IMG/VR virus record: IMGVR_UViG_3300046170_000519
Span: 124,001-188,000 of that record
DNA: 64,000 bases
Reading direction: 5' to 3' (one strand)
Positions 20,079-46,161 of this stretch are shown piece by piece (position 1 is the first letter of the stretch; every line of letters starts with the position of its first letter). A model generated the notes under the pieces. That model was not told the DNA's origin. It ran no database searches and saw only the letters and a program-made list of their open reading frames with translations. The translations under genes were made by a program, and so were the position numbers.

Positions 20079-23000
20079 TTAGTTCGTACAGTTGTATAAA
20101 ATTTCGTAATTAAAAGTTGTGGAATAAATAGTCGTTAAACCATTTGTTGTAGTTATGGTATTTTCGCTGTAAGAAATAGAGGTTTCAATCAAATAAGATT
20201 CGATACCATCTCTAGATCCACATAAGTTTATAACATCTTTTTCTGTTGGAGCCCTAGGATCTAAGCTGGGATGTTGAGAAGAACTCTGTTGTGTATTGCT
20301 GATTTCGAATGTACTATAATTAGAGGAAGATGGATCTAATACAGGAATAGCTTTAGGAACATTAAGAACATTATGGTGGCAAGGAGAATCTTGAACGCAA
20401 TCACTACATTTCGAATCATTCAAGCAAGCTGTAATTGAAACTTTATGATAACCATCTTTTTCAAAATCTATAGTATAATACTCTAAATTGAAATCAGAAG
20501 TTGATGTTGGCGTTGATTCATGATGCGGTAATTCTATATTAAAATTATATTTTTCATAATTATTAGATTTTACTTCTTTTATTAAATTAGATGTATTATT
20601 TTCATATACTTTTATATCCGCTTCATCAATGGCATTTAAATCTCCATCATGAAATAATCCGTAGTAGTAACTTTTATCTTCTACGTCCATAGTTCCATCA
20701 CAAATACTGCAAGCTTCGGAATTAGAAAGGATTGGTAATAAATCAGTAAAGTGATATTGATTATTATAATCTTTTCCAAAAAATCTTACATGTAAAGAAG
20801 CTTGAGAATAAGGTATAAATGCTGCAGCTCCTCGATTCGCCGCAACTTTTAATAGTCGAGGATATGATATATCAGTTGAAGTATGCTGTAATACTCCGTT
20901 AAAAGCTGGCGAACCATACACTCTAAATGGATTTGAATTATTAACAAAAACGATTAAACCTGGATTTCCTCCAGCATTAATGCATATAACATTACTGATT
21001 GAGACTCCTTGAAGAGGAGAATCACACTCAACATACATTTCTAAAGGTAATTCTTCTGATGGAGTTGGGGTATGAGTGTCTGTGTCTGTTAATGTAGTAG
21101 TCGGAGTTTCACAAGAAACACAGCATTGATCGCAAGAATCTTGTGGGTAAACATCATTAGCTTTAGGAGTATCAGTTGAATCTGCAGGAATAACTTTATT
21201 AATTAATAAATTATTGTTAAATTCCTGAGAATTTTTGAATTGACCTGCAGAACCTCCACAAGAAGAAGCTGAAACCGCATTACAGAAAGAAACATCAACT
21301 TGAGAGTCAAATACATAACATTTAGAGGTTGAGAAATCTTTAATAACACTTGGGAAATCAGCATAAGATTCAACTCCTATATAAGCTGGTAATGTAGCAG
21401 AAAGGCAGTTGCTAGGCTCAGAACCATCTCCACAGGTGTATGAGCAACTAATATACTTACCGCAGAGTCCAAAGCCACAAGTCTCAGTTTCAGTTTGAGT
21501 CTGAGTTTCTGTCTCTGTTGCTGTTTGAGTCTGAGTTTCTGTCTCTGTTGCTGTTTGAGTCTGAGTTTCTGTCTCTGTTGCTGTCTGAGTCTGAGTTCTT
21601 GTTTGAGTGTTTGTAGCTGTCTGGGTCTCAACCTCTGTTTCTGTCTCTGTCTCGGTTTGAGTGTTTGTTGATGTCTCGGTCTGAGTTCGTGTTTGAGTCT
21701 TTGTTACTGTCTGGGTCTCAGTCTCTGTTTCAGTCTCTGTCTCGGTCTGAGTTTGTGTTTGAGTCTTTGTTGCTGTCTGGGTCTCAGTCTCTGTTTCAGT
21801 CTCTGTCTCGGTCTGAGTTTGTGTTTTAGTCTGAGTCTGAGTTTCTGTCTCGGTCTGAGTTTGTGTTTGAGTCTTTGTTGCTGTCTGGGTCTCAGTCTCT
21901 GTTTCAGTCTCTGTCTCGGTCTGAGTTTGTGTTTCAGTCTGAGTCTGAGTTTCTGTCTCGGTCTGAGTTCGTGTTTGAGTCTTTGTTGCTGTCTGGGTCT
22001 CAGTCTCTGTTTCAGTCTCTGCCTCGGTCTGAGTTTGTGTTTCAGTCTGAGTTTGTGTTTCAGTCTGAGTCTGAGTTTCTGTCTCGGTCTGAGTTCGTGT
22101 TTGAGTCTTTGTTGCTGTCTGGGTCTCAGTCTCTGTTTCAGTCTCTGTCTCGGTCTGAGTTTGTGTTTCAGTCTGAGTCTGAGTTTCTGTCTCGGTCTGA
22201 GTTCGTGTTTGAGTCTTTGTTGCTGTCTGGGTCTCAGTCTCTGTTTCAGTCTCTGTCTCGGTCTGAGTTTGTGTTTCAGTCTGAGTCTGAGTTTCTGTCT
22301 CGGTCTGAGTCTGAGTTTCTGTCTCGGTCTGAGTCTGAGTTTCTGTCTCGGTCTGAGTCTGAGTTTGTGTTTCTGTCTCGGTCTGAGTCTGAGTTTGTGT
22401 TTCTGTCTCGGTCTGAGTCTGAGTTTCTGTCTCGGTCTGAGTCTGAGTTTGTGTTTCAGTCTGAGTTTGTGTTTCTGTCTCGGTCTGAGTTTGTGTTTCT
22501 GTCTCGGTCTGAGTCTGAGTTTCTGTCTCGGTCTGAGTCTGAGTTTGTGTTTCAGTCTGAGTCTGAGTTTGTGTTTCAGTCTGAGTCTGAGTTTGTGTTT
22601 CAGTCTGAGTCTGAGTTTGTGTTTCAGTCTGAGTCTGAGTTTCAGTAAAGGTATTTGTTTCAGTCTGAGTCTCTGTTTCAGTCTCTGTCTCGGTCTGAGT
22701 TTGTGTTTCAGTAAAGGTATTTGTTTCAGTCTGAGTCTGAGTTTCTGTCTCGGTCTGAGTCTGGGTTTCTGTCTCGGTCTGAGTCTGAGTTTCTGTTTCA
22801 GTCTGAGTCTGAGTTTGTGTTTCAGTCTGAGTCTGAGTTTCTGTTTCAGTCTGAGTCTGAGTTTCTGTTTCAGTCTGAGTCTGAGTTTCAGTAAAGGTAT
22901 TTGTTTCAGTCTGAGTCTGAGTTTCTGTCTCGGTCTGAGTCTGAGTTTGTGTTTCAGTCTGAGTCTGAGTTTCTGTCTCGGTCTGAGTCTGAGTTTGTGT

Positions 23001-26000
23001 TTCAGTCTGAGTCTGAGTCTCTGTTTCAGTCTGAGTCTGAGTTTCTGTCTCGGTCTGAGTCTGGGTTTCTGTCTCGGTCTGAGTCTGAGTCTCTGTTTCA
23101 GTCTGAGTCTGAGTTTCTGTCTCGGTCTGAGTCTGAGTTTGTGTTTCTGTCTCGGTCTGAGTCTGAGTTTCTGTCTCGGTCTGAGTCTGAGTTTCTGTTT
23201 CAGTCTGAGTCTGAGTTTCTGTTTCAGTCTGAGTCTGAGTCTGAGTTTGTGTTTCAGTAAAGGTATTTGTTTCAGTCTGAGTCTGAGTTTCTGTCTCGGT
23301 CTGAGTCTGAGTTTGTGTTTCTGTCTCGGTCTGAGTCTGAGTTTCTGTCTCGGTCTGAGTCTGAGTTTGTGTTTCTGTCTCGGTCTGAGTCTGAGTTTGT
23401 GTTTCTGTCTCGGTCTGAGTCTGAGTTTCTGTCTCGGTCTGAGTCTGAGTTTGTGTTTCTGTCTCGGTCTGAGTCTGAGTTTGTGTTTCTGTCTCGGTCT
23501 GAGTCTGAGTTTGTGTTTCTGTCTCGGTCTGAGTCTGAGTTTGTGTTTCTGTCTCGGTCTGAGTCTGAGTTTGTGTTTCTGTCTCGGTCTGAGTCTGAGT
23601 CTCTGTTTCAGTCTCTGTCTCGGTCTGAGTTTGTGTTTCAGTCTGAGTCTGAGTTTCTGTCTCGGTCTGAGTCTGAGTTTCTGTCTCGGTCTGAGTCTGA
23701 GTTTCTGTCTCGGTCTGAGTCTGAGTTTGTGTTTCTGTCTCGGTCTGAGTCTGAGTTTGTGTTTCTGTCTCGGTCTGAGTCTGAGTTTCTGTCTCGGTCT
23801 GAGTCTGAGTTTGTGTTTCAGTCTGAGTTTGTGTTTCTGTCTCGGTCTGAGTTTGTGTTTCTGTCTCGGTCTGAGTCTGAGTTTCTGTCTCGGTCTGAGT
23901 CTGAGTTTGTGTTTCAGTCTGAGTCTGAGTTTGTGTTTCAGTCTGAGTCTGAGTTTGTGTTTCAGTCTGAGTCTGAGTTTGTGTTTCAGTCTGAGTCTGA
24001 GTTTCAGTAAAGGTATTTGTTTCAGTCTGAGTCTCTGTTTCAGTCTCTGTCTCGGTCTGAGTTTGTGTTTCAGTAAAGGTATTTGTTTCAGTCTGAGTCT
24101 GAGTTTCTGTCTCGGTCTGAGTCTGGGTTTCTGTCTCGGTCTGAGTCTGAGTTTCTGTTTCAGTCTGAGTCTGAGTTTGTGTTTCAGTCTGAGTCTGAGT
24201 TTCTGTTTCAGTCTGAGTCTGAGTTTCTGTTTCAGTCTGAGTCTGAGTTTCAGTAAAGGTATTTGTTTCAGTCTGAGTCTGAGTTTCTGTCTCGGTCTGA
24301 GTCTGAGTTTGTGTTTGAGTCTGAGTCTGAGTTTCTGTCTCGGTCTGAGTCTGAGTTTGTGTTTCAGTCTGAGTCTGAGTCTCTGTTTCAGTCTGAGTCT
24401 GAGTTTCTGTCTCGGTCTGAGTCTGGGTTTCTGTCTCGGTCTGAGTCTGAGTCTCTGTTTCAGTCTGAGTCTGAGTTTCTGTCTCGGTCTGAGTCTGAGT
24501 CTGAGTTTCTGTCTCGGTCTGAGTCTGAGTTTCTGTCTCGGTCTGAGTCTGAGTTTCTGTCTCGGTCTGAGTCTGAGTTTCTGTTTCAGTCTGAGTCTGA
24601 GTTTCTGTTTCAGTCTGAGTCTGAGTCTGAGTTTGTGTTTCAGTAAAGGTATTTGTTTCAGTCTGAGTCTGAGTTTCTGTCTCGGTCTGAGTCTGAGTTT
24701 GTGTTTCTGTCTCGGTCTGAGTCTGAGTTTGTGTTTCTGTCTCGGTCTGAGTTTCTGTCTCGGTCTGAGTCTGAGTTTCTGTCTCGGTCTGAGTCTGAGT
24801 TTGTGTTTCTGTCTCGGTCTGAGTCTGAGTTTCTGTCTCGGTCTGAGTCTGAGTTTGTGTTTCTGTTTCAGTCTGAGTTTGTGTTTCTGTCTCGGTCTGA
24901 GTCTGAGTCTGAGTTTCTGTTTCAGTCTGAGTCTGAGTTTCTGTCTCGGTCTGAGTCTGAGTTTCTGTTTCAGTCTGAGTCTGAGTTTCTGTCTCGGTCT
25001 GAGTCTGAGTCTGAGTTTCTGTCTCGGTCTGAGTTTGTGTTTCTGTCTCGGTCTGAGTCTGAGTTTCTGTCTCGGTCTGAGTCTGAGTTTGTGTTTCAGT
25101 CTGAGTCTGAGTTTGTGTTTCAGTCTGAGTCTGAGTTTGTGTTTCAGTCTGAGTCTGAGTTTGTGTTTCAGTCTGAGTCTGAGTTTCAGTAAAGGTATTT
25201 GTTTCAGTCTGAGTCTCTGTTTCAGTCTCTGTCTCGGTCTGAGTTTGTGTTTCAGTAAAGGTATTTGTTTCAGTCTGAGTCTGAGTTTCTGTCTCGGTCT
25301 GAGTCTGGGTTTCTGTCTCGGTCTGAGTCTGAGTTTCTGTTTCAGTCTGAGTCTGAGTTTGTGTTTCAGTCTGAGTCTGAGTTTCTGTCTCGGTCTGAGT
25401 CTGAGTTTGTGTTTCAGTCTGAGTTTGTGTTTCTGTCTCGGTCTGAGTTTGTGTTTCTGTCTCGGTCTGAGTCTGAGTTTCTGAGTCTGAGTTTGTGTTT
25501 GAGTCTGAGTCTGAGTTTCTGTCTCGGTCTGAGTCTGAGTTTGTGTTTCAGTCTGAGTCTGAGTCTCTGTTTCAGTCTGAGTCTGAGTTTCTGTCTCGGT
25601 CTGAGTCTGGGTTTCTGTCTCGGTCTGAGTCTGAGTCTCTGTTTCAGTCTGAGTCTGAGTTTCTGTCTCGGTCTGAGTCTGAGTCTGAGTTTCTGTCTCG
25701 GTCTGAGTCTGAGTTTCTGTCTCGGTCTGAGTCTGAGTTTCTGTTTCAGTCTGAGTCTGAGTTTCTGTTTCAGTCTGAGTCTGAGTCTGAGTTTGTGTTT
25801 CAGTAAAGGTATTTGTTTCAGTCTGAGTCTGAGTTTCTGTCTCGGTCTGAGTCTGAGTTTGTGTTTCTGTCTCGGTCTGAGTCTGAGTTTGTGTTTCTGT
25901 CTCGGTCTGAGTTTCTGTCTCGGTCTGAGTCTGAGTTTCTGTCTCGGTCTGAGTCTGAGTTTGTGTTTCTGTCTCGGTCTGAGTCTGAGTTTCTGTCTCG

Positions 26001-29000
26001 GTCTGAGTCTGAGTTTGTGTTTCTGTTTCAGTCTGAGTTTGTGTTTCTGTCTCGGTCTGAGTCTGAGTCTGAGTTTCTGTTTCAGTCTGAGTCTGAGTTT
26101 CTGTCTCGGTCTGAGTCTGAGTTTCTGTTTCAGTCTGAGTCTGAGTTTCTGTCTCGGTCTGAGTCTGAGTCTGAGTTTCTGTCTCGGTCTGAGTCTGAGT
26201 CTGAGTTTCTGTTTCGGTCTGAGTCTGAGTTTCTGTCTCGGTCTGAGTCTGAGTCTGAGTTTGTGTTTCAGTAAAGGTATTTGTTTCAGTCTGAGTCTGA
26301 GTTTCTGTCTCGGTCTGAGTCTGAGTCTGAGTTTCTGTCTCGGTCTGAGTCTGAGTCTCTGTTTGAGTCTGAGTACCAGTTTCTGTTTCAGTCTGAGTCT
26401 GAGTTTGTGTTTCAGTCTGAGTCTGAGTCTGAGTTTCTGTTTCAGTCTGAGTCTGAGTTTCTGTCTCGGTCTGAGTCTGAGTCTGAGTTTGTGTTTCAGT
26501 AAAGGTATTTGTTTCAGTCTGAGTCTGAGTTTCTGTCTCGGTCTGAGTCTGAGTTTGTGTTTCTGTCTCGGTCTGAGTCTGAGTTTGTGTTTCTGTCTCG
26601 GTCTGAGTCTGAGTTTGTGTTTCTGTCTCGGTCTGAGTCTGAGTTTGTGTTTCTGTCTCGGTCTGAGTCTGAGTTTGTGTTTCTGTCTCGGTCTGAGTCT
26701 GAGTTTGTGTTTCTGTCTCGGTCTGAGTCTGAGTTTGTGTTTCTGTCTCGGTCTGAGTCTGAGTCTCTGTTTCAGTCTCTGTCTCGGTCTGAGTTTGTGT
26801 TTCAGTCTGAGTCTGAGTTTCTGTCTCGGTCTGAGTCTGAGTTTCTGTCTCGGTCTGAGTCTGAGTTTCTGTCTCGGTCTGAGTCTGAGTTTCTGTCTCG
26901 GTCTGAGTCTGAGTTTCTGTCTCGGTCTGAGTCTGAGTTTGTGTTTCTGTCTCGGTCTGAGTCTGAGTTTGTGTTTCTGTCTCGGTCTGAGTCTGAGTTT
27001 CTGTCTCGGTCTGAGTCTGAGTTTGTGTTTCAGTCTGAGTTTGTGTTTCTGTCTCGGTCTGAGTTTGTGTTTCTGTCTCGGTCTGAGTTTGTGTTTCTGT
27101 CTCGGTCTGAGTCTGAGTTTCTGTCTCGGTCTGAGTCTGAGTTTGTGTTTCAGTCTGAGTCTGAGTTTGTGTTTCAGTCTGAGTCTGAGTTTGTGTTTCA
27201 GTCTGAGTCTGAGTTTGTGTTTCAGTCTGAGTCTGAGTTTCAGTAAAGGTATTTGTTTCAGTCTGAGTCTCTGTTTCAGTCTCTGTCTCGGTCTGAGTTT
27301 GTGTTTCAGTAAAGGTATTTGTTTCAGTCTGAGTCTGAGTTTCTGTCTCGGTCTGAGTCTGGGTTTCTGTCTCGGTCTGAGTCTGAGTTTCTGTTTCAGT
27401 CTGAGTCTGAGTTTGTGTTTCAGTCTGAGTCTGAGTTTCTGTTTCAGTCTGAGTCTGAGTTTCTGTTTCAGTCTGAGTCTGAGTTTCAGTAAAGGTATTT
27501 GTTTCAGTCTGAGTCTGAGTTTCTGTCTCGGTCTGAGTCTGAGTTTGTGTTTCAGTCTGAGTCTGAGTTTCTGTCTCGGTCTGAGTCTGAGTTTGTGTTT
27601 CAGTCTGAGTCTGAGTCTCTGTTTCAGTCTGAGTCTGAGTTTCTGTCTCGGTCTGAGTCTGGGTTTCTGTCTCGGTCTGAGTCTGAGTCTCTGTTTCAGT
27701 CTGAGTCTGAGTTTCTGTCTCGGTCTGAGTCTGAGTTTGTGTTTCTGTCTCGGTCTGAGTCTGAGTTTCTGTCTCGGTCTGAGTCTGAGTTTCTGTTTCA
27801 GTCTGAGTCTGAGTTTCTGTTTCAGTCTGAGTCTGAGTCTGAGTTTGTGTTTCAGTAAAGGTATTTGTTTCAGTCTGAGTCTGAGTTTCTGTCTCGGTCT
27901 GAGTCTGAGTTTGTGTTTCTGTATCGGTCTGAGTCTGAGTTTCTGTCTCGGTCTGAGTCTGAGTTTGTGTTTCTGTCTCGGTCTGAGTCTGAGTTTGTGT
28001 TTCTGTCTCGGTCTGAGTCTGAGTTTCTGTCTCGGTCTGAGTCTGAGTCTGAGTTTGTGTTTCAGTAAAGGTATTTGTTTCAGTCTGAGTCTGAGTTTCT
28101 GTCTCGGTCTGAGTCTGAGTTTGTGTTTCTGTCTCGGTCTGAGTCTGAGTTTGTGTTTCTGTCTCGGTCTGAGTCTGAGTTTGTGTTTCTGTCTCGGTCT
28201 GAGTCTGAGTTTGTGTTTCTGTCTCGGTCTGAGTCTGAGTTTCTGTCTCGGTCTGAGTCTGAGTTTGTGTTTCAGTCTGAGTTTGTGTTTCTGTCTCGGT
28301 CTGAGTTTGTGTTTCTGTCTCGGTCTGAGTCTGAGTTTCTGTCTCGGTCTGAGTCTGAGTTTGTGTTTCAGTCTGAGTCTGAGTTTGTGTTTCAGTCTGA
28401 GTCTGAGTTTGTGTTTCAGTCTGAGTCTGAGTTTGTGTTTCAGTCTGAGTCTGAGTTTCAGTAAAGGTATTTGTTTCAGTCTGAGTCTCTGTTTCAGTCT
28501 CTGTCTCGGTCTGAGTTTGTGTTTCAGTAAAGGTATTTGTTTCAGTCTGAGTCTGAGTTTCTGTCTCGGTCTGAGTCTGGGTTTCTGTCTCGGTCTGAGT
28601 CTGAGTTTCTGTTTCAGTCTGAGTCTGAGTTTGTGTTTCAGTCTGAGTCTGAGTTTCTGTTTCAGTCTGAGTCTGAGTTTCTGTTTCAGTCTGAGTCTGA
28701 GTTTCAGTAAAGGTATTTGTTTCAGTCTGAGTCTGAGTTTCTGTCTCGGTCTGAGTCTGAGTTTGTGTTTGAGTCTGAGTCTGAGTTTCTGTCTCGGTCT
28801 GAGTCTGAGTTTGTGTTTCAGTCTGAGTCTGAGTCTCTGTTTCAGTCTGAGTCTGAGTTTCTGTCTCGGTCTGAGTCTGGGTTTCTGTCTCGGTCTGAGT
28901 CTGAGTCTCTGTTTCAGTCTGAGTCTGAGTTTCTGTCTCGGTCTGAGTCTGAGTCTGAGTTTCTGTCTCGGTCTGAGTCTGAGTTTCTGTCTCGGTCTGA

Positions 29001-32000: not shown

Positions 32001-35000
32001 TTTCTGTCTCGGTCTGAGTCTGAGTTTCTGTCTCGGTCTGAGTCTGAGTTTGTGTTTCTGTTTCAGTCTGAGTTTGTGTTTCTGTCTCGGTCTGAGTCTG
32101 AGTCTGAGTTTCTGTCTCGGTCTGAGTCTGAGTTTCTGTTTCAGTCTGAGTCTGAGTTTCTGTCTCGGTCTGAGTCTGAGTCTGAGTTTCTGTCTCGGTC
32201 TGAGTCTGAGTTTCTGTCTCGGTCTGAGTTTGTGTTTCAGTCTGAGTCTCTGTTTCAGTCTCTGTTTCAGTCTGAGTCTGAGTTTGTGTTTCTGTCTCGG
32301 TCTGAGTCTGAGTTTCTGTCTCGGTCTGAGTCTGAGTTTGTGTTTCTGTTTCAGTCTGAGTTTGTGTTTCTGTCTCGGTCTGAGTCTGAGTTTCAGTAAA
32401 GGTATTTGTTTCAGTCTGAGTCTGAGTTTGTGTTTCTGTCTCGGTCTGAGTCTGAGTTTCTGTCTCGGTCTGAGTCTCAGTTTGTGTTTCTGTCTCGGTC
32501 TGAGTCTGAGTTTCTGTCTCGGTCTGAGTCTGAGTTTCTGTCTCGGTCTGAGTCTGAGTTTGTGTTTCTGTCTCGGTCTGAGTCTGAGTCTGAGTTTCTG
32601 TTTCAGTCTGAGTCTGAGTTTGTGTTTCTGTCTCGGTCTGAGTCTGAGTTTCAGTAAAGGTATTTGTTTCAGTCTGAGTCTGAGTCTGAGTTTGTGTTTC
32701 AGTAAAGGTATTTGTTTCAGTCTGAGTCTGAGTTTCTGTCTCGGTCTGAGTCTGAGTTTGTGTTTCTGTCTCGGTCTGAGTCTGAGTTTGTGTTTCTGTC
32801 TCGGTCTGAGTCTGAGTTTCTGTCTCGGTCTGAGTCTGAGTTTGTGTTTCTGTTTCAGTCTGAGTTTGTGTTTCTGTCTCGGTCTGAGTCTGAGTTTGTG
32901 TTTCTGTCTCGGTCTGAGTCTGAGTTTGTGTTTCTGTCTCGGTCTGAGTCTGAGTTTGTGTTTCAGTCTGAGTCTGAGTTTCTGTCTCGGTCTGAGTCTG
33001 AGTTTCTGTCTCGGTCTGAGTCTGAGTTTGTGTTTCAGTCTGAGTTTGTGTTTCTGTCTCGGTCTGAGTCTGAGTTTGTGTTTCAGTCTGAGTCTGAGTT
33101 TCTGTTTCAGTCTGAGTCTGAGTTTCTGTTTCAGTCTGAGTCTGAGTTTCTGTCTCGGTCTGAGTCTGAGTTTCTGTCTCGGTCTGAGTCTGAGTTTCTG
33201 TCTCGGTCTGAGTCTGAGTCTGAGTCTGAGTTTCTGTCTCGGTCTGAGTCTGAGTTTGTGTTTCAGTAAAGGTATTTGTTTCAGTCTGAGTCTGAGTTTC
33301 TGTTTCAGTCTGAGTCTGAGTCTGAGTTTGTGTTTCAGTAAAGGTATTTGTTTCAGTCTGAGTCTGAGTTTGTGTTTCTGTCTCGGTCTGAGTCTGAGTT
33401 TCTGTCTCGGTCTGAGTCTGAGTTTCTGTTTCAGTCTGAGTCTGAGTTTCTGTCTCGGTCTGAGTCTGAGTTTCTGTTTCAGTCTGAGTCTGAGTTTCTG
33501 TCTCGGTCTGAGTCTGAGTCTGAGTTTCTGTCTCGGTCTGAGTCTGAGTCTGAGTTTCTGTCTCGGTCTGAGTCTGAGTTTGTGTTTCAGTCTGAGTCTG
33601 AGTTTGTGTCTCGGTCTGAGTCTGAGTCTGAGTTTCTGTTTCAGTCTGAGTCTGAGTTTGTGTTTCAGTCTGAGTCTGAGTTTCTGTTTCAGTCTGAGTC
33701 TGAGTTTCTGTCTCGGTCTGAGTCTGAGTTTCTGTCTCGGTCTGAGTCTGAGTTTCTGTCTCGGTCTGAGTCTGAGTCTGAGTTTGTGTTTCAGTAAAGG
33801 TATTTGTTTCAGTCTGAGTCTGAGTTTCTGTTTCAGTCTGAGTCTGAGTTTCAGTAAAGGTATTTGTTTCAGTCTGAGTCTCTGTTTCAGTCTCTGTCTC
33901 GGTCTGAGTTTGTGTTTCAGTCTGAGTCTGAGTTTCTGTTTCAGTCTGAGTCTGAGTTTCTGTTTCAGTCTGAGTCTGAGTTTCAGTAAAGGTATTTGTT
34001 TCAGTCTGAGTCTGAGTTTGTGTTTCTGTCTCGGTCTGAGTCTGAGTTTGTGTTTCTGTCTCGGTCTGAGTCTGAGTCTGAGTTTCTGTTTCAGTCTGAG
34101 TCTGAGTTTGTGTTTCTGTCTCGGTCTGAGTCTGAGTTTCAGTAACTGAGTTTCTGTCTCGGTCTGAGTCTGAGTCTGAGTTTGTGTTTCAGTAAAGGTA
34201 TTTGTTTCAGTCTGAGTCTGAGTTTCTGTCTCGGTCTGAGTCTGAGTTTGTGTTTCTGTCTCGGTCTGAGTCTGAGTTTGTGTTTCTGTCTCGGTCTGAG
34301 TCTGAGTTTGTGTTTCTGTCTCGGTCTGAGTCTGAGTTTGTGTTTCTGTCTCGGTCTGAGTCTGAGTTTGTGTTTCTGTCTCGGTCTGAGTCTGAGTTTC
34401 TGTCTCGGTCTGAGTCTGAGTTTGTGTTTCAGTCTGAGTTTGTGTTTCTGTCTCGGTCTGAGTTTGTGTTTCTGTCTCGGTCTGAGTCTGAGTTTCTGTC
34501 TCGGTCTGAGTCTGAGTTTGTGTTTCAGTCTGAGTCTGAGTTTGTGTTTCAGTCTGAGTCTGAGTTTGTGTTTCAGTCTGAGTCTGAGTTTGTGTTTCAG
34601 TCTGAGTCTGAGTTTCAGTAAAGGTATTTGTTTCAGTCTGAGTCTCTGTTTCAGTCTCTGTCTCGGTCTGAGTTTGTGTTTCAGTAAAGGTATTTGTTTC
34701 AGTCTGAGTCTGAGTTTCTGTCTCGGTCTGAGTCTGGGTTTCTGTCTCGGTCTGAGTCTGAGTTTCTGTTTCAGTCTGAGTCTGAGTTTGTGTTTCAGTC
34801 TGAGTCTGAGTTTCTGTTTCAGTCTGAGTCTGAGTTTCTGTTTCAGTCTGAGTCTGAGTTTCAGTAAAGGTATTTGTTTCAGTCTGAGTCTGAGTTTCTG
34901 TTTCAGTCTGAGTCTGAGTCTGAGTTTGTGTTTCAGTAAAGGTATTTGTTTCAGTCTGAGTCTGAGTTTGTGTTTCTGTCTCGGTCTGAGTCTGAGTTTC

Positions 35001-38000
35001 TGTCTCGGTCTGAGTCTGAGTTTCTGTTTCAGTCTGAGTCTGAGTTTCTGTCTCGGTCTGAGTCTGAGTTTCTGTTTCAGTCTGAGTCTGAGTTTCTGTC
35101 TCGGTCTGAGTCTGAGTCTGAGTTTCTGTCTCGGAGTCTGAGTCTGAGTTTCTGTCTCGGTCTGAGTCTGAGTTTGTGTTTCAGTCTGAGTCTGAGTTTG
35201 TGTCTCGGTCTGAGTCTGAGTCTGAGTTTCTGTTTCAGTCTGAGTCTGAGTTTGTGTTTCAGTCTGAGTCTGAGTTTCTGTTTCAGTCTGAGTCTGAGTT
35301 TCTGTCTCGGTCTGAGTCTGAGTTTCTGTCTCGGTCTGAGTCTGAGTTTCTGTCTCGGTCTGAGTCTGAGTCTGAGTTTGTGTTTCAGTAAAGGTATTTG
35401 TTTCAGTCTGAGTCTGAGTTTCTGTTTCAGTCTGAGTCTGAGTTTCAGTAAAGGTATTTGTTTCAGTCTGAGTCTCTGTTTCAGTCTCTGTCTCGGTCTG
35501 AGTTTGTGTTTCAGTAAAGGTATTTGTTTCAGTCTGAGTCTGAGTTTCTGTCTCGGTCTGAGTCTGGGTTTCTGTCTCGGTCTGAGTCTGAGTTTCTGTT
35601 TCAGTCTGAGTCTGAGTTTGTGTTTCAGTCTGAGTCTGAGTTTCTGTTTCAGTCTGAGTCTGAGTTTCTGTTTCAGTCTGAGTCTGAGTTTCAGTAAAGG
35701 TATTTGTTTCAGTCTGAGTCTGAGTTTGTGTTTCAGTCTGAGTCTGAGTTTGTGTTTCAGTCTGAGTCTGAGTTTGTGTTTCAGTCTGAGTCTGAGTTTC
35801 TGTCTCGGTCTGAGTCTGAGTTTCTGTCTCGGTCTGAGTCTGAGTTTCTGTCTCGGTCTGAGTCTGAGTCTGAGTTTCTGTCTCGGTCTGAGTCTGAGTC
35901 TCTGTTTCAGTCTGAGTCTGAGTTTGTGTTTCAGTCTGAGTCTGAGTTTCTGTTTCAGTCTGAGTCTGAGTTTCTGTCTCGGTCTGAGTCTGAGTTTCTG
36001 TCTCGGTCTGAGTCTGAGTTTCTGTCTCGGTCTGAGTCTGAGTCTGAGTTTGTGTTTCAGTAAAGGTATTTGTTTCAGTCTGAGTCTGAGTTTCTGTCTC
36101 GGTCTGAGTCTGAGTTTGTGTTTCTGTCTCGGTCTGAGTCTGAGTTTGTGTTTCTGTCTCGGTCTGAGTCTGAGTTTGTGTTTCTGTCTCGGTCTGAGTC
36201 TGAGTTTGTGTTTCTGTCTCGGTCTGAGTCTGAGTTTCTGTCTCGGTCTGAGTCTGAGTTTGTGTTTCAGTCTGAGTTTGTGTTTCTGTCTCGGTCTGAG
36301 TTTGTGTTTCTGTCTCGGTCTGAGTCTGAGTTTCTGTCTCGGTCTGAGTCTGAGTTTGTGTTTCAGTCTGAGTCTGAGTTTGTGTTTCAGTCTGAGTCTG
36401 AGTTTGTGTTTCAGTCTGAGTCTGAGTTTGTGTTTCAGTCTGAGTCTGAGTTTCAGTAAAGGTATTTGTTTCAGTCTGAGTCTCTGTTTCAGTCTCTGTC
36501 TCGGTCTGAGTTTGTGTTTCAGTAAAGGTATTTGTTTCAGTCTGAGTCTGAGTTTCTGTCTCGGTCTGAGTCTGGGTTTCTGTCTCGGTCTGAGTCTGAG
36601 TTTCTGTTTCAGTCTGAGTCTGAGTTTGTGTTTCAGTCTGAGTCTGAGTTTCTGTTTCAGTCTGAGTCTGAGTTTCTGTTTCAGTCTGAGTCTGAGTTTC
36701 AGTAAAGGTATTTGTTTCAGTCTGAGTCTGAGTTTCTGTCTCGGTCTGAGTCTGAGTTTGTGTTTGAGTCTGAGTCTGAGTTTCTGTCTCGGTCTGAGTC
36801 TGAGTTTGTGTTTCAGTCTGAGTCTGAGTCTCTGTTTCAGTCTGAGTCTGAGTTTCTGTCTCGGTCTGAGTCTGGGTTTCTGTCTCGGTCTGAGTCTGAG
36901 TCTCTGTTTCAGTCTGAGTCTGAGTTTCTGTCTCGGTCTGAGTCTGAGTTTGTGTTTCTGTCTCGGTCTGAGTCTGAGTTTGTGTTTCTGTCTCGGTCTG
37001 AGTCTGAGTTTGTGTTTCTGTTTCAGTCTGAGTTTCTGTCTCGGTCTGAGTCTGAGTTTCTGTCTCGGTCTGAGTCTGAGTTTCTGTCTCGGTCTGAGTC
37101 TGAGTTTCTGTCTCGGTCTGAGTTTCTGTCTCGGTCTGAGTCTGAGTTTGTGTTTCTGTCTCGGTCTGAGTCTGAGTTTGTGTTTCGGTCTGAGTCTGAG
37201 TTTGTGTTTCTGTTTCAGTCTGAGTTTGTGTTTCAGTCTGAGTCTGAGTTTCTGTCTCGGTCTGAGTCTGAGTTTGTGTTTCTGTTTCAGTCTGAGTTTG
37301 TGTTTCTGTCTCGGTCTGAGTCTGAGTTTGTGTTTCTGTCTCGGTCTGAGTCTGAGTTTGTGTTTCTGTCTCGGTCTGAGTCTGAGTTTGTGTTTCTGTC
37401 TCGGTCTGAGTCTGAGTTTGTGTTTCTGTCTCGGTCTGAGTCTGAGTTTGTGTTTCTGTCTCGGTCTGAGTCCGAGTTTGTGTTTCTGTTTCAGTCTGAG
37501 TTTCTGTCTCGGTCTGAGTTTCTGTCTCGGTCTGAGTCTGAGTTTGTGTTTCTGTCTCGGTCTGAGTCTGAGTTTCTGTCTCGGTCTGAGTCTGAGTTTG
37601 TGTTTCTGTTTCAGTCTGAGTTTGTGTTTCAGTCTGAGTCTGAGTTTCTGTCTCGGTCTGAGTCTGAGTTTGTGTTTCTGTTTCAGTCTGAGTTTGTGTT
37701 TCTGTCTCGGTCTGAGTCTGAGTTTCTGTCTCGGTCTGAGTCTGAGTTTGTGTTTCTGTTTCAGTCTGAGTTTGTGTTTCTGTCTCGGTCTGAGTCTGAG
37801 TTTCTGTCTCGGTCTGAGTCTGAGTTTGTGTTTCTGTTTCAGTCTGAGTTTGTGTTTCTGTCTCGGTCTGAGTCTGAGTCTGAGTTTCTGTCTCGGTCTG
37901 AGTCTGAGTTTCTGTTTCAGTCTGAGTCTGAGTTTCTGTCTCGGTCTGAGTCTGAGTCTGAGTTTCTGTCTCGGTCTGAGTCTGAGTTTCTGTCTCGGTC

Positions 38001-40744
38001 TGAGTTTGTGTTTCAGTCTGAGTCTCTGTTTCAGTCTCTGTTTCAGTCTGAGTCTGAGTTTGTGTTTCTGTCTCGGTCTGAGTCTGAGTTTCTGTCTCGG
38101 TCTGAGTCTGAGTTTGTGTTTCTGTTTCAGTCTGAGTTTGTGTTTCTGTCTCGGTCTGAGTCTGAGTTTCAGTAAAGGTATTTGTTTCAGTCTGAGTCTG
38201 AGTTTGTGTTTCTGTCTCGGTCTGAGTCTGAGTTTCTGTCTCGGTCTGAGTCTCAGTTTGTGTTTCTGTCTCGGTCTGAGTCTGAGTTTCTGTCTCGGTC
38301 TGAGTCTGAGTTTGTGTTTCTGTCTCGGTCTGAGTCTGAGTTTGTGTTTCTGTCTCGGTCTGAGTCTGAGTTTGTGTTTCAGTCTGAGTCTGAGTTTCTG
38401 TCTCGGTCTGAGTCTGAGTTTCTGTCTCGGTCTGAGTCTGAGTTTGTGTTTCAGTCTGAGTTTGTGTTTCTGTCTCGGTCTGAGTCTGAGTTTGTGTTTC
38501 AGTCTGAGTCTGAGTTTCTGTTTCAGTCTGAGTCTGAGTTTCTGTTTCAGTCTGAGTCTGAGTTTCTGTCTCGGTCTGAGTCTGAGTTTCTGTCTCGGTC
38601 TGAGTCTGAGTTTCTGTCTCGGTCTGAGTCTGAGTCTGAGTCTGAGTTTCTGTCTCGGTCTGAGTCTGAGTTTGTGTTTCAGTAAAGGTATTTGTTTCAG
38701 TCTGAGTCTGAGTTTCTGTTTCAGTCTGAGTCTGAGTCTGAGTTTGTGTTTCAGTAAAGGTATTTGTTTCAGTCTGAGTCTGAGTTTCTGTCTCGGTCTG
38801 AGTCTGAGTTTCTGTCTCGGTCTGAGTCTGAGTTTCTGTCTCGGTCTGAGTCTGAGTCTGAGTCTGAGTTTCTGTCTCGGTCTGAGTCTGAGTTTGTGTT
38901 TCAGTAAAGGTATTTGTTTCAGTCTGAGTCTGAGTTTCTGTTTCAGTCTGAGTCTGAGTCTGAGTTTGTGTTTCAGTAAAGGTATTTGTTTCAGTCTGAG
39001 TCTGAGTTTCTGTCTCGGTCTGAGTCTGAGTTTGTGTTTCTGTCTCGGTCTGAGTCTGAGTTTCTGTCTCGGTCTGAGTCTGAGTTTCTGTTTCAGTCTG
39101 AGTCTGAGTTTCTGTCTCGGTCTGAGTCTGAGTTTCTGTTTCAGTCTGAGTCTGAGTTTCTGTCTCGGTCTGAGTCTGAGTCTGAGTTTCTGTCTCGGTC
39201 TGAGTCTGAGTCTGAGTTTCTGTCTCGGTCTGAGTCTGAGTTTGTGTTTCAGTCTGAGTCTGAGTTTGTGTCTCGGTCTGAGTCTGAGTCTGAGTTTCTG
39301 TTTCAGTCTGAGTCTGAGTTTCTGTTTCAGTCTGAGTCTGAGTTTCTGTCTCGGTCTGAGTCTGAGTTTCTGTCTCGGTCTGAGTCTGAGTTTCTGTCTC
39401 GGTCTGAGTCTGAGTCTGAGTTTCTGTCTCGGTCTGAGTCTGAGTCTGAGTTTGTGTTTCAGTCTGAGTCTGAGTTTCTGTTTCAGTCTGAGTCTGAGTC
39501 TGAGTTTGTGTTTCAGTAAAGGTATTTGTTTCAGTCTGAGTCTGAGTTTCTGTTTCAGTCTGAGTCTGAGTCTGAGTTTGTGTTTCAGTAAAGGTATTTG
39601 TTTCAGTCTGAGTCTGAGTTTCTGTCTCGGTCTGAGTCTGAGTCTGAGTTTCTGTTTCAGTCTGAGTCTGAGTTTCTGTCTCGGTCTGAGTCTGAGTTTC
39701 TGTTTCAGTCTGAGTCTGAGTTTCTGTCTCGGTCTGAGTCTGAGTTTCTGTCTCGGTCTGAGTCTGAGTTTCTGTCTCGGTCTGAGTCTGAGTTTCTGTC
39801 TCGGTCTGAGTCTGAGTTTGTGTTTCTGTTTCAGTCTGAGTTTGTGTTTCTGTCTCGGTCTGAGTCTGAGTTTGTGTTTCAGTCTGAGTCTGAGTTTGTG
39901 TTTCAGTCTGAGTCTGAGTTTGTGTTTCAGTCTGAGTCTGAGTTTCTGTCTCGGTCTGAGTCTGAGTTTCTGTCTCGGTCTGAGTCTGAGTTTCTGTCTC
40001 GGTCTGAGTCTGAGTCTGAGTTTCTGTCTCGGTCTGAGTCTGAGTCTGAGTTTCTGTTTCAGTCTGAGTCTGAGTTTGTGTTTCAGTCTGAGTCTGAGTT
40101 TCTGTTTCAGTCTGAGTCTGAGTCTGAGTTTCTGTTTCAGTCTGAGTCTGAGTTTCTGTCTCGGTCTGAGTCTGAGTCTGAGTTTCTGTCTCGGTCTGAG
40201 TCTGAGTTTGTGTTTCAGTCTGAGTCTGAGTTTCTGTTTCAGTCTGAGTCTGAGTCTGAGTTTGTGTTTCAGTAAAGGTATTTGTTTCAGTCTGAGTCTG
40301 AGTTTCTGTCTCGGTCTGAGTCTGAGTTTCTGTCTCGGTCTGAGTCTGAGTTTGTGTTTCTGTCTCGGTCTGAGTCTGAGTTTCTGTTTCAGTCTGAGTC
40401 TGAGTTTCTGTCTCGGTCTGAGTCTGAGTTTCTGTTTCAGTCTGAGTTTGTGTTTCTGTTTCAGTCTGAGTCTCTGTTTGAGTCTGAGTACCAGTTTCTG
40501 TTTCAGTAAATGTGCTTGTCTGAGTCTCCGTTTCAGTATAAGTTACTGTAGGAGTATATGTATATGTTTGAGTCTGAGTCTCCGTTTCAGTATAAGTTAC
40601 TGTAGGAGTATATGTATATGTTTGAGTCTGAGTCTCCGTTTCAGTATAAGTTACTGTAGGAGTATATGTATATGTATCAGTATAAGTACTAGTTTCAGTC
40701 GGAGGAGACTGTATTAATTTTGAGCGTGCAAATACCGATAACAT
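20079..40744 (-). CDS. giant (Thr-Glu/Thr-Gln)n stalk protein, ~6,890 aa if restored, interrupted by about 6 indels as assembled; ~470-aa Cys-containing C-terminal region
   Basis: The 319-aa ORF frame continues upstream without a stop through 21039-21693 (...[21 protein letters not shown]...[15 protein letters not shown]). The Thr-X frame changes at ~25480, 30123, 30166, 30210, 34150 and 35134. Confidence 0.85.
21480..40510 (-). repeat. ~19-kb coding minisatellite built from 6-bp dipeptide units with kb-scale higher-order repeats
   Basis: Almost entirely ACTCAG, ACCGAG, ACAGAA, ACACAA, ACTGAA and ACAAATACCTTT units; identical blocks recur (e.g. 22901/27499, 28075/36070). Confidence 0.97.
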
Positions 40745-40755
40745 AGTACATAGCC

Positions 40756-41703
40756 CTAGCCTTTGACTTTGAATGTTGCAGTGTATCCAAGATTACCCGC
40801 TCCAAACTTAGGTGATTGAGATAAATATAAAGTAGCTCCCTCTACTAAAGTTAAAGGAGAGGTGAAATCAGATTTTGAGTTTTTTTCATCTAATGGGTGT
40901 GTCCATGATTTTTCTGATTTTGTTCCATCTGCAGCTGATTGATTTAATGTTATTGTTGATTCTGTATTAGAACCTCCTGTTGTAAATATAGAAGCTGTAA
41001 CACTTAAAACTTTTTTGTTATGCCAGGAGGAGGGGACAACTATGATTGCATCTTCAAAATTAAAATTATCAATAAGTTCAGAAGCTGGAACATTATTTAT
41101 TGCAAAATACTCTTCTTCATTGGGGTATTTTTTCCAATTAGCTTCATCACGAGTCCAGACTCCGCCGTTTCCGTTTGATTCACCTTCTACTTTATGATTA
41201 ATCCAAGCATTTATTAAAGCTTGTGAAGGAGCATTATCCCCAGAAACTTGAGCATTGTACTGAGTAACAGAGATATCTCCAACAGCTGCATTATATAAAG
41301 TTTCATAATCATCAATCATAAATTGATAAGACTGGTTTTTCTCTATTACATAGACTACCATGCCTAATTTTAAACGACCAGAACTCATTAAATCTCTGTT
41401 TAGCTCTAATAAAGCAGGAGTAGTTATTATTTCAACACAGGGAGGGACCTCATTCCTGTTACAGCTTCTTGGAACTTCTTCTGTTCCACCAGGTGTATAT
41501 ATTAATGGTATAAAATTAAGAGGATCATCAAGTGGAATGCCTGTGACTCCATTAGTAGTACTATAAGTAATATTGTTTAAATGATAATATTCTTGTAAAC
41601 CACCAATGAGAGATGTCCCAGAAGTTACTCCAGTTTGAGAACTCATGGAAAAAGAATCTGCAACTTGTTTTGCTGTTAAATGTATGTGATCTGAAAAACT
41701 CAT
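40756..41703 (-). CDS. hypothetical structural protein with tail-fibre-type RLKLGMVVYVIE motif
   Basis: 315 aa; LMSSGRLKLGMVVYVIEKNQSYQF resembles a motif recurrent in phage tail-fibre N-termini; operon with the stalk genes. Confidence 0.6.
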   Translation of the reverse strand: MSFSDHIHLTAKQVADSFSMSSQTGVTSGTSLIGGLQEYYHLNNITYSTTNGVTGIPLDDPLNFIPLIYTPGGTEEVPRSCNRNEVPPCVEIITTPALLELNRDLMSSGRLKLGMVVYVIEKNQSYQFMIDDYETLYNAAVGDISVTQYNAQVSGDNAPSQALINAWINHKVEGESNGNGGVWTRDEANWKKYPNEEEYFAINNVPASELIDNFNFEDAIIVVPSSWHNKKVLSVTASIFTTGGSNTESTITLNQSAADGTKSEKSWTHPLDEKNSKSDFTSPLTLVEGATLYLSQSPKFGAGNLGYTATFKVKG

Positions 41704-43239: not shown

Positions 43240-43264
43240 TTTTCGAATAAATACTAAAAAAGAA

Positions 43265-43284
43265 TGTGTAAATTGTTTTTACAC
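43265..43284. promoter_or_regulatory. inverted repeat TGTGTAAA-N5-TTTACACA carrying the GTGTA motif on both strands
   Basis: aatgtgtaaattgtttttacacaaa in the gap upstream of 43239. Confidence 0.5.
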
Positions 43285-43325
43285 AAAAAAATATAGTTTT
43301 GTTTATTTTTTGCTAAATACATAAT

Positions 43326-46160: not shown

Positions 46161-46161
46161 G

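What the first reader, a model, noticed from the sequence alone, without database searches (positions are those of the whole stretch)
20079..40744. Hidden ~20.7-kb gene: ~6,300 residues of (Thr-Glu/Thr-Gln)n ending in a Cys-containing head
Seen: the ORF track lists only a 2201-aa N-terminal piece and a 319-aa ORF. Manual translation shows the 319-aa frame runs uninterrupted up into the array (21039-21693), so both are ends of one gene. The middle was missed because the Thr-X frame contains no ATG/GTG/TTG. The array is about half Thr, with the rest nearly all Glu/Gln and no Pro, Gly-turn or hydrophobic core. At ~0.35 nm per residue a fully extended chain would be ~2.2 micrometres, longer than a typical host cell. 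Inference: a polyanionic tether that increases host encounter or binds cations/particles.
Basis: partly seen in the sequence, partly recalled or inferred. Interest (0 to 1): 0.88.

Follow-up and report, generated by a model that had tools for sequence, protein, structure and literature searches.

The report
Giant phage Thr-X repeat fibre gene
A 206-kb uncultivated phage spends a tenth of its genome on one gene made of about 3,190 perfect threonine-glutamate/glutamine pairs ending in a cysteine-rich head; in this assembly the gene is cut by frameshifts that two sister assemblies lack, and it is most likely a very long, possibly sugar-coated, flexible stalk carrying a binding head.

Summary
The repeat is real. 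On the minus strand, 40744 to about 21480, there are 3,187 strictly alternating Thr-X dipeptides (X = Gln 53%, Glu 42%), followed by a 469-residue Cys-rich domain. The Thr-X phase changes four times through six frame-breaking indels (35133; 34145; 30206, 30165 and 30127; 25483), and 20,666 nt is not a multiple of 3.

Two sister long-read assemblies of the same phage match the window exactly up to three of these four places. There they carry in-frame sequence. One has the gene open for 4,897 codons to its contig end.

Orthologues in four related phages share the start MLSVF(A/T)RS, a Thr-X array and, where the 3' end was read as one ORF (two of them), the TCG(F/Y)G head. Their arrays range from about 25 to more than 2,900 residues.

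So this is most likely one gene of about 6,900-7,050 codons, an extreme expansion of a length-variable spacer, with assembly errors in this contig.

The function is inferred, not shown. The best reading is a long polyanionic stalk, possibly O-glycosylated, presenting a binding head within a cluster of fibre-like genes. The "2.2 µm" length holds only for a fully extended chain.

The parts
40700..40744 (-). Start codon and 15-residue N-terminal peptide ([15 protein letters not shown]). The first eight residues are conserved in all orthologues found.
   Evidence: The spacer to the upstream gene (TAGGGCTATGTAYYATG) is also conserved.
35135..40699 (-). Array block 1: 928 consecutive Thr-X dipeptides in the frame of the ATG. 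It opens with three perfect 54-nt units.
   Evidence: It is 100% identical to sister assembly L016 over the first 5,611 nt of the gene.
35130..35134 (-). Frame break 1: the window lacks 4 nt (CAGA) that L016 and the paralogous copies within the array have.
34139..35132 (-). Off-frame tail of the listed 2201-aa ORF: 331 codons of Leu/Arg/Lys/Gln text ending in TGA. The same DNA holds block 2 (164 dipeptides, 34149-35129) in another frame.
34144..34145 (-). Frame break 2: 2 extra nt (TT). Just downstream is a stretch (34140-33921) where L016 has 276 more nt, all in multiples of 6.
30211..34143 (-). Array block 3: 656 dipeptides.
30127..30206 (-). Frame break 3: a cluster of three single-base indels (+T, -A, -A) and two substitutions within 80 nt. 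It could not be compared directly with a sister assembly.
   Evidence: Indirect evidence: the L016 gene is open for 4,897 codons.
25484..30124 (-). Array block 4: 774 dipeptides.
25483..25484 (-). Frame break 4: the window lacks a 142-nt block (23x6+4) that is present in sister assembly L007, which stays in frame.
21480..25478 (-). Array block 5: 576 + 64 + 25 dipeptides, in the frame of the C-terminal domain. It becomes more degenerate (A, K, R, V at X) towards the head.
20079..21479 (-). C-terminal head and stop codon. It has a Cys-rich module of about 130 aa starting [10 protein letters not shown], a short Pro/Thr linker and a module of about 320 aa. The listed 319-aa ORF (20079-21038) is only the part after the first ATG.
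40756..41703 (-). Conserved upstream partner gene (315 aa). Its C-terminal half is predicted as a C1q/TNF-like jelly roll, as in the heads of collagen-like phage fibres.
41713..48831 (-). Three intact paralog-like genes (508, 944 and 889 aa). Each has a related N-terminal domain, a Thr-(Glu/Gln) array with TNTF punctuation and its own unrelated C-terminal domain.
21693..40717 (+). Antisense ORFs (1263, 1622, 1297 and 1923 aa; Leu/Ser/Cys/Phe text). The public annotation called ORFs of this kind (1263, 1568 and 1297 aa) as genes. They are by-products of the repeat.

Best explanation
This is one very large gene of an uncultivated phage of about 206 kb. It encodes a short conserved N-terminal peptide, about 3,190-3,260 strictly alternating Thr-(Gln/Glu) dipeptides and a two-module Cys-rich C-terminal head of about 470 residues. 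The six frame-breaking indels in this window are most likely consensus or assembly errors of a long-read assembly inside a repeat with exact internal copies up to 982 bp. They are probably not features of the phage. The array is an extreme expansion of a spacer whose length is free to vary between related phages, from about 25 to about 6,400 residues. Inferred mechanism: the array has no hydrophobic core and about 1,330 negative charges, so it forms a long, flexible, hydrated stalk. The stalk may be stiffened by O-linked sugars on the threonines, made with the nucleotide-sugar enzymes encoded next to the cluster. It holds the disulfide-rich head far from its anchoring point, enlarging the capture radius for host cells or particles. 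Shown: the array, its phase structure, the in-frame sister sequences, the orthologue architecture and the protein-level conservation of the Thr-X pattern. Inferred: location on the virion, glycosylation, and binding by the head.
For: Sister assemblies. L016 (sample 3300046168) is identical to the window over the 889, 944, 508 and 315-aa genes and over the first 5,611 nt of this gene. It differs first exactly at break 1, where it has the missing 4 nt. The only other difference that is not a multiple of 3 is the 2 extra nt at break 2; the rest are 12, 42, 24, 18, 66, 114 and 30 nt. L016 keeps strict Thr alternation for all 1,657 dipeptides held, and its gene is called as 4,897 aa up to the contig end. 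L007 (sample 3300046171) is identical from the stop codon to break 4, has the 142 nt the window lacks, and is open for 2,306 codons to its contig end.

Orthologues. P0003/L026 (909 aa) and L031 (381 aa) carry the MLSVFAR start, a Thr-X array and the TCG(F/Y)G head in one ORF, in the same gene order. Two other noisy long-read contigs (L029, L033) show the same kind of frame flipping inside their arrays.

Protein-level selection. Four genes in the cluster encode the same Thr-(E/Q) pattern with TNTF punctuation, yet share at most 68 nt of exact DNA and use different codon mixes.

Fibre context. The partner gene has a C1q-like fibre-head fold. The paralogs combine a related N-terminal domain with unrelated C-terminal domains.

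Sugar context. Three epimerase/dehydratase genes and a UDP-glucose dehydrogenase-like gene lie 8-16 kb upstream. In a related phage the cluster is flanked by genes with weak or faint glycosyltransferase family hits, a sulfotransferase-family gene and a methyltransferase-family gene.

Precedent. [quoted passage not shown]
Against: As assembled, the gene is broken. The longest real product would be 1,870 in-frame residues plus an off-frame tail. Break 3 could not be checked against another assembly. An ORF that stays open does not by itself prove the Thr-X phase, because one other frame of the repeat is also free of stops. No raw reads were available. No glycosyltransferase was recognised in the window. 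There are no PHROG, Pfam or PDB matches for the head, and its structure prediction failed (pLDDT 34). The cluster sits between the two ribonucleotide reductase genes, among metabolic genes, and not in a recognised structural module. This gene lacks the N-terminal domain that the three paralogs share. No capsid, tail or terminase gene was seen in the sequence examined.
Confidence: 0.6

Rival explanations
1. The frameshifts are real in this strain. The gene is a decaying pseudogene or a knocked-out variant that makes only a 2,201-residue truncated product without the head, and the rest of the array is untranslated DNA.
For: The sequence as given has six frame-breaking indels. Two of them (the 4-nt and 142-nt deficits) lie at CAGA microhomologies, which out-of-register replication slippage could also produce. 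The large variation in array length among relatives suggests weak constraint on the spacer.
Against: All the lesions that could be tested are private to this assembly, while the flanks are 100% identical to the sister samples. About 13.6 kb downstream of the first break there is still not a single broken Thr codon within the blocks. Three indels and two substitutions are packed into 80 nt, which looks like a local consensus failure. Other long-read contigs of relatives show the same frame flipping.
Confidence: 0.15
2. The array is over-expanded or mis-joined by the assembler, and the true gene is much shorter.
For: Exact internal repeats reach 982 bp. About 20 short-read assemblies break 0.4-1 kb into the array on each side. 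The assemblies differ by repeat-unit blocks. The 944-aa paralog is 816 nt shorter in a short-read assembly.
Against: The array is not a stack of identical units. The TNTF punctuation is irregular and there are 1,289 unique 40-mers. An independent assembly has at least 14.7 kb of the gene before its contig ends. Contigs from two samples are 205,857 and 207,177 bp long and start about 56 kb apart on the same map. That fits two complete circular maps with arrays of similar length, though this is an inference.
Confidence: 0.1
3. The protein is real and full length but is not part of the virion. It would be an accessory product released at lysis or acting inside the infected cell, for example a polyanionic cation- or particle-binding polymer, a matrix or decoy material, or a modifier of the host surface.
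For: The cluster lies among nucleotide-metabolism and sugar genes, not in a recognised structural module. The neighbouring 4,048-aa protein starts with a LysM domain and has only sub-threshold hints of a serine protease at its end (a GDSGS motif, and NAL1_N hits below the Pfam cut-off). Such a protein need not be structural. There is no recognisable virion-anchoring domain.
Against: There is no signal peptide or membrane anchor at the N-terminus. The partner gene has a fibre-head fold whose best matches are phage fibre and virion proteins. The pattern of a related N-terminal domain with a variable C-terminal domain in the paralogs is typical of virion fibres.
Confidence: 0.15

Closest known systems
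Ser-Asp dipeptide-repeat stalks of staphylococcal Clf/Sdr adhesins (from general knowledge)
   Same: A long run of a hydroxy-amino-acid/acidic dipeptide, encoded by short degenerate DNA repeats. Its length varies between strains. It acts as a stalk that projects a binding domain, and the hydroxy residues are glycosylated by dedicated enzymes.
   Different: Here the pair is Thr-Glu/Gln, not Ser-Asp. There is no signal peptide, no LPXTG anchor, and the binding domain is at the C-terminal rather than the N-terminal end. The gene is phage-encoded and 10-40 times longer.
Serine-rich repeat glycoproteins (Fap1, GspB) of Gram-positive cocci (from general knowledge)
   Same: Thousands of residues of alternating Ser-X dipeptides, O-glycosylated in the cytoplasm, forming surface fibrils.
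   Different: No accessory Sec system, no special signal peptide and no cell-wall anchor. Thr replaces Ser. No glycosyltransferase was found in the window.
CryoSeek freshwater glycofibrils TLP-2 and TLP-4 (bioRxiv 10.1101/2025.09.30.679562; PMC11725842)
   Same: A single linear peptide chain of very short repeats (dipeptide in TLP-2, rise 6.2 A per repeat) with a hydroxy residue in every repeat carrying a glycan. The encoding genes were not found for the di- and tripeptide fibrils, which the authors link partly to the difficulty of sequencing such repeats. At 6.2 A per dipeptide this array would be about 2.0 micrometres long.
   Different: TLP-2 was tentatively modelled as Ala-(phospho)Ser, not Thr-Glu/Gln. 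Nothing here shows glycosylation. The source samples were not identified as the same kind of water.
Phage fibres with collagen-like or other repeat shafts and C1q-like heads, and the head filament of Caulobacter phage phiCbK (from general knowledge; fold matches)
   Same: A low-complexity shaft of variable length with a globular binding end, thought to raise the chance of host contact. The neighbouring 315-aa protein has the C1q-like head fold.
   Different: There are no Gly-X-Y repeats, no predicted trimerisation element, and no sequence or profile match to any tail-fibre family. The shaft is one to two orders of magnitude longer.
Mucin PTS domains
   Same: About half the residues are Thr. 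The region is extended and hydrated and is a possible dense O-glycan carrier.
   Different: Pro is 0.1% and Ser 0.1% at the X positions. The strict two-residue period and the high Glu/Gln content are unlike PTS domains.

Membership tests
Orthologue family 'MLSVFAR - Thr-X array - TCG(F/Y)G head' of this phage clade | Conserved N-terminal peptide MLSVF(A/T)RS directly after the 315-aa-family gene, with an intergenic spacer of 9-12 nt | tested here: met
   Window, L026, L029, L031 and L033.
Orthologue family 'MLSVFAR - Thr-X array - TCG(F/Y)G head' of this phage clade | Thr-X array and Cys-rich C-terminal domain in the same reading frame as the start codon | tested here: not met
   Not met in the window as assembled, which has four phase changes. 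Met in the 909-aa and 381-aa orthologues. Met at three of the four break points in the sister assemblies.
Orthologue family 'MLSVFAR - Thr-X array - TCG(F/Y)G head' of this phage clade | Homologous head domain with a conserved cysteine pattern | tested here: met
   phmmer E = 7.5e-9 to P0003 over residues 1-467. Cysteines are conserved in alignment A3.
Phage tail-fibre / receptor-binding proteins | Match to a known fibre family or fold, or a recognisable virion-attachment domain | tested here: inconclusive
   No PHROG, Pfam or PDB sequence match for the head, and no GenBank phage match. The structure model is unusable. Only the neighbouring gene shows a fibre-head fold.
Phage tail-fibre / receptor-binding proteins | Presence in the virion | not testable with these tools
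   Needs proteomics or microscopy.
Serine-rich repeat / Ser-Asp repeat surface adhesins | N-terminal secretion signal and C-terminal LPXTG cell-wall anchor | tested here: not met
   The N-terminus is [15 protein letters not shown] followed directly by the array. The C-terminus ends ...EILYNCTN with no LPXTG.
Serine-rich repeat / Ser-Asp repeat surface adhesins | Ser at the repeating hydroxy position | tested here: not met
   All 3,187 repeat positions are Thr.
Glycofibrils with a linear short-repeat peptide core (CryoSeek TLP-2/TLP-4 type) | Single chain of di- to tetrapeptide repeats with a hydroxy residue in every repeat | tested here: met
   Strict Thr-X period over 3,187 repeats.
Glycofibrils with a linear short-repeat peptide core (CryoSeek TLP-2/TLP-4 type) | Dense glycan shell attached to each repeat | not testable with these tools
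   The evidence is only circumstantial: nucleotide-sugar genes nearby, and weak or faint glycosyltransferase hits plus a sulfotransferase hit in relative L033.
Mucin-type PTS domain | Pro/Thr/Ser-rich composition | tested here: not met
   Thr is 50%, but Pro and Ser are each about 0.1% of the X positions.

The most novel reading that the evidence does not exclude
This gene family is the genetic source of a class of environmental glycofibrils. The (Thr-X)n chain would be coated with glycans, using the phage's own sugar-nucleotide pathway, to give a semi-rigid filament of about 2 micrometres, longer than the host cell. The phage would carry or release it to catch hosts or particles. That would make it the longest single-polypeptide appendage known for a virus, and the first dipeptide-repeat glycofibril traced to a gene.
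Probability: 0.15. Interest if true: 0.85.

Novelty: new variant of a known kind. Interest (0 to 1): 0.66.

Why it matters
If the gene is intact in nature, a phage commits about 10% of its genome (20.7 of 205.9 kb) and about 3,200 Thr, 1,700 Gln and 1,300 Glu per molecule to one low-complexity polypeptide. At roughly 6,900-7,050 residues it exceeds the 5,002-residue tape measure protein of phage P23-45, which its authors call giant (bioRxiv 10.1101/2022.12.01.518664).

The orthologue series, with arrays of about 25, 260, more than 2,900 and 6,400 residues, is a natural experiment on how spacer length evolves in a host-contact protein.

It is also a practical warning. Public gene calling turned this locus into three antisense "proteins". 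Short-read assemblies break at both ends of the array. Long-read consensus introduces frameshifts. Genes of this kind are therefore systematically missing from protein databases, and trypsin-based proteomics would not detect the array either.

Finally, it offers a concrete candidate gene type for the dipeptide-repeat glycofibrils seen by cryo-EM in fresh water, whose origin is unknown.

Tried and rejected
- **Alternative genetic code (TGA read as sense):** rejected. The interruptions are changes of repeat phase, not in-frame stops. Frame 0 meets 75 TGA codons only after the phase has moved.
- **Programmed ribosomal frameshifting:** rejected. The six sites differ from one another, have no slippery heptamer, and are absent from the sister assemblies.
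- **The 319-aa ORF as an independent gene:** rejected. Its ATG lies inside the conserved head. About 150 conserved residues, including the TCGFG Cys module, lie upstream of it in the same frame, and the orthologues have them in one ORF.
- **Plus-strand ORFs of 1,263-1,923 aa:** rejected as Leu/Ser/Cys/Phe mirror text of the repeat.
- **Beta-solenoid or ice-binding TxT array:** considered and set aside. There are no regularly spaced turn residues; the TNTF punctuation is irregular, at 48-1,470 nt.
- **Searches that led nowhere:**
  - Structure prediction of the head from a single sequence (pLDDT 34).
  - PDB sequence searches with the head and the 315-aa protein.
  - GenBank phage tblastn with both.
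  - IMG/VR scans, which returned only the source contig.
  - Two metagenome-contig scans meant to reach break 3 in a sister assembly.
  - A word-index homologue search with the paralogs' N-terminal domain.
  - PHROG scans of unknown neighbours in the window and in related loci.
  - tRNA scan: none in the window.
  - One blastn self-comparison gave nonsense and was replaced by k-mer counting.
  - A first greedy comparison with L016 suggested a 398-nt insertion at break 2. A proper alignment showed 2 extra nt plus in-register unit differences.
Full report
**Source of the window**

The window is positions 124001-188000 of a 205,857-bp contig. It is held in IMG/VR as UViG_3300046170_000519 and at JGI as 3300046170 Ga0494229_00544. 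The genes around the finding are phage-like and tightly packed on the minus strand:
- both ribonucleotide reductase subunits;
- dUTPase;
- a T4-type dNMP kinase and an SSB;
- a RecA/UvsX-like gene just outside the window.

No capsid, tail or terminase gene was seen in the sequence I could reach. Calling it a phage therefore rests on these genes, on its filing as a viral contig and on its size.

**What is in the sequence**

Tandem Repeats Finder reports one array from about 21.5 to 40.5 kb. On the minus strand every second codon is ACN. The unbroken runs are 928, 164, 656, 774, 576, 64 and 25 dipeptides, 3,187 in total. The other codon is CAG, GAA, GAG or CAA in 95% of cases, giving Gln 53% and Glu 42%. 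Asn and Phe are 1.8% each and occur as 56 TNTF motifs at irregular spacing. No ATG, GTG or TTG occurs in this frame.

The array starts 15 codons after the ATG at 40744. It ends in a 469-residue Cys-rich domain that stops at 20079.

**What is not as described**

The locus is not one open frame:
- 20,666 nt is not a multiple of 3.
- The longest open stretches on the minus strand overlap in different frames.
- The Thr-X phase moves from frame 0 to 2, then 1, then 0, then 2.

Reading the junctions and comparing each with its best internal copy shows the following:

| Position | Change in the window |
|---|---|
| 35133 | 4-nt deficit |
| 34145 | 2 extra nt |
| 30206 / 30165 / 30127 | +1, -1, -1, with two substitutions, all within 80 nt |
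| 25483 | deletion (142 nt, see below) |

The listed 2201-aa ORF is 1,870 residues of true frame plus 331 residues of Leu/Arg/Lys text, read in a second frame of the repeat that happens to be free of stops. The 319-aa ORF is only the part of the head after the first ATG. The public annotation of this contig instead called three antisense ORFs inside the array. These encode Leu/Ser/Cys/Phe mirror text.

**Are the frameshifts real?**

The same phage occurs in many samples. The 546-aa and 315-aa flanking proteins are found with identical sequence on about 20 contigs each. The short-read contigs match the window and end 0.4-1 kb into the array on either side.

Two contigs come from sister samples and carry much more of the array:

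- **L016 (3300046168).** It is identical to the window across the 889, 944, 508 and 315-aa genes and across the first 5,611 nt of this gene. The first difference is exactly break 1, where it has the four bases the window lacks. A full alignment shows only one further difference that is not a multiple of 3, the two extra bases at break 2. All other differences are 12, 42, 24, 18, 66, 114 and 30 nt, which are whole repeat units. L016 keeps strict Thr alternation over all 1,657 dipeptides I could read. Its gene is called as 4,897 codons running off the contig end.
- **L007 (3300046171).** It is identical from the stop codon up to break 4. There it has a 142-nt block missing from the window, and it stays open for 2,306 codons to its contig end.

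So three of the four break places are private to this assembly, with perfect identity on both sides. Break 3 could not be reached. A packed cluster of three indels and two substitutions looks like a local consensus failure. Two other long-read contigs of related phages also flip in and out of the Thr-X frame. I conclude, at about 80% confidence, that the breaks are assembly errors.

All searches used single in-frame pieces.

**Is the length real?**

- The array has exact internal copies of up to 982 bp, so only long reads can resolve it.
- It is not a stack of identical units: it contains 1,289 unique 40-mers and irregular punctuation.
- L016 holds at least 14.7 kb of the gene.
- The contigs from 3300046170 and 3300046171 are 205,857 and 207,177 bp long and start about 56 kb apart on the same gene order (coordinates). 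This is what two complete circular maps with similar arrays would give. It is an inference, not a measurement.

**Relatives**

The head is nearly an orphan, with four hits among 1.84 billion representative proteins. The informative one, P0003 (909 aa), begins MLSVFAR. It has a Thr-X array of about 260 residues with His, Ser and Leu at X, and then TPTCGFGYC... aligned to the whole head. Its locus has the same gene order.

The 315-aa partner defines a clade of 36 protein clusters at 39-91% identity. Downstream of it, every orthologue I read begins MLSVF(A/T)RS after a conserved spacer. Array lengths are:
- about 25 residues in L031;
- about 260 in L026;
- more than 2,900 in L029 (917 aa called, plus about 6 kb more array in shifting frames);
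- about 6,400 here.

Threonine at every second position is constant across these, while X changes between phages.

Within the window, the 508, 944 and 889-aa genes have related N-terminal domains, the same Thr-(Glu/Gln) pattern with TNTF punctuation, and unrelated C-terminal domains. Their arrays share at most 68 nt of exact sequence with the giant array and use different codon mixes. The pattern is therefore maintained at the protein level, not only by DNA amplification.

The giant array itself looks recently amplified. Gln is 81% CAG there, against 19% CAG in other genes of the window.

**How it probably works**

The array has no hydrophobic residues apart from one Phe per roughly 110 residues, almost no Pro or Gly, and about 1,330 Glu. 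It cannot form a globular core. It should behave as a hydrated polyanionic chain.

| Assumption | Length |
|---|---|
| Fully extended chain | about 2.2 micrometres |
| 6.2 A per dipeptide, as measured for the dipeptide-repeat glycofibril TLP-2 | about 2.0 micrometres |
| Unmodified flexible chain, r.m.s. end-to-end | about 50 nm |
| Mucin-like stiffened chain, r.m.s. end-to-end | about 130-180 nm |

These figures come and bioRxiv 10.1101/2025.09.30.679562.

The head has a conserved module with 10-12 cysteines, followed by a second module. This suggests a disulfide-stabilised extracellular binding domain.

The partner protein, modelled from a 33-sequence alignment (mean pLDDT 66.8; the C-terminal 125 residues at 80-95), has a C1q/TNF-like jelly roll. 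Its best matches are the C1q head, a phage cement protein, and collagen-repeat, tail-fibre and virion proteins of uncultured phages. TM-scores are modest (0.45-0.6 on the target).

Nucleotide-sugar enzymes lie beside the cluster. In one relative the cluster is next to genes with glycosyltransferase-like (weak or faint), sulfotransferase and methyltransferase family hits.

Taken together, the best reading is a stalk of variable length, possibly O-glycosylated on Thr, that presents a binding head. It belongs to a cluster of fibre-like proteins with interchangeable heads. Location on the virion, glycosylation and binding are all inferred.

**Comparison with known systems**

In function it most resembles three things: the Ser-Asp repeat stalks of staphylococcal adhesins, the Ser-X repeats of serine-rich repeat glycoproteins, and the repeat shafts of phage fibres. 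It is a member of none of them. It has no signal peptide, no LPXTG, no Ser, no Gly-X-Y, and no profile match.

It fits the peptide-core definition of the CryoSeek glycofibrils, but the glycan shell cannot be tested here.

I rate it a new variant of a known kind: a repeat stalk carrying a binding head. It is remarkable for its size, the perfection of its period and its phage origin.

Noticed in passing
window 6263-18409 (-): A 4,048-aa ORF with an N-terminal LysM domain. It has many Cys-rich modules (274 Cys; recurring C-x-NYDP / DCNFDP motifs and a thrice-repeated block of about 130 aa) joined by Thr-X linkers, including about 30 copies of TDTAH. Its C-terminal region contains NNHV...GDSGS, which suggests a trypsin-like serine protease, but Pfam gives only sub-threshold NAL1_N hits. 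In relative L031 this C-terminal part is a separate 620-aa gene.
   Followed up: partly
window 41713-48831 (-): Three intact genes (508, 944 and 889 aa) with related N-terminal domains, Thr-(Glu/Gln) arrays and unrelated C-terminal domains. The 889-aa protein ends in two copies of a unit of about 90 aa. The 944-aa gene is 816 nt (136 x 6) shorter in short-read contig L017. This could be real length variation or repeat collapse.
   Followed up: partly
window 21693-40717 (+); loci L002 and L006: The public gene calls for this contig are antisense ORFs of 1,263, 1,568 and 1,297 aa inside the array. Protein databases therefore hold mirror-text 'proteins' in place of the real product.
   Followed up: yes
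window 5192-6205 and 52753-55206 (-): The small and large ribonucleotide reductase subunit genes are separated by about 46 kb. That interval holds the whole repeat-protein cluster and the sugar-nucleotide genes, as if the cluster were inserted between them.
   Followed up: no
window 55288-56148 (-): A UDP-glucose dehydrogenase-like ORF of only 286 aa. It has the N-terminal and central domains but no room for the C-terminal domain before the next gene, so it may be truncated or a short form.
   Followed up: no
window 21480-40699 (-): Codon usage in the array is the reverse of the rest of the window for Gln (81% CAG against 19%) and is shifted for Glu (35% GAG against 19%). This raises G+C from about 33% to 45% and gives the array a strong AT skew.
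   Followed up: yes
window 40745-40760 (-); L026, L029, L031, L033: The short spacer between the 315-aa gene and the giant gene (TAGGGCTATGTAYYATG) is conserved at the nucleotide level in phages whose proteins are only about 50% identical. It may be a translational coupling or initiation element.
   Followed up: partly
window about 8130-8200 (-), residues about 3400-3425 of the 4,048-aa ORF; C-terminus of P0003 (L026): A shared motif Y-x-C-x-x-HGYMGG, reminiscent of the Cys-His-Met ligand spacing of cupredoxins. It occurs in the 4,048-aa protein and at the end of the 909-aa orthologue of the giant gene. This comes from memory only and was not tested.
   Followed up: no
window 40518-40675 (-): Three perfect 54-nt units ([18 protein letters not shown]) open the array. 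They are 100% identical to one another, unlike the rest of the array.
   Followed up: no
locus L033, 487-2765: In a related phage the fibre cluster is next to genes with family hits to a sulfotransferase, a GT47/exostosin-like protein (faint), a Gly_transf_sug glycosyltransferase (weak) and a methyltransferase. This suggests the clade builds modified glycans.
   Followed up: no
window 59103-60359 (-): A 418-aa ORF with a sub-threshold tetraspanin match and a DUF4834 match. It may be a membrane protein.
   Followed up: no
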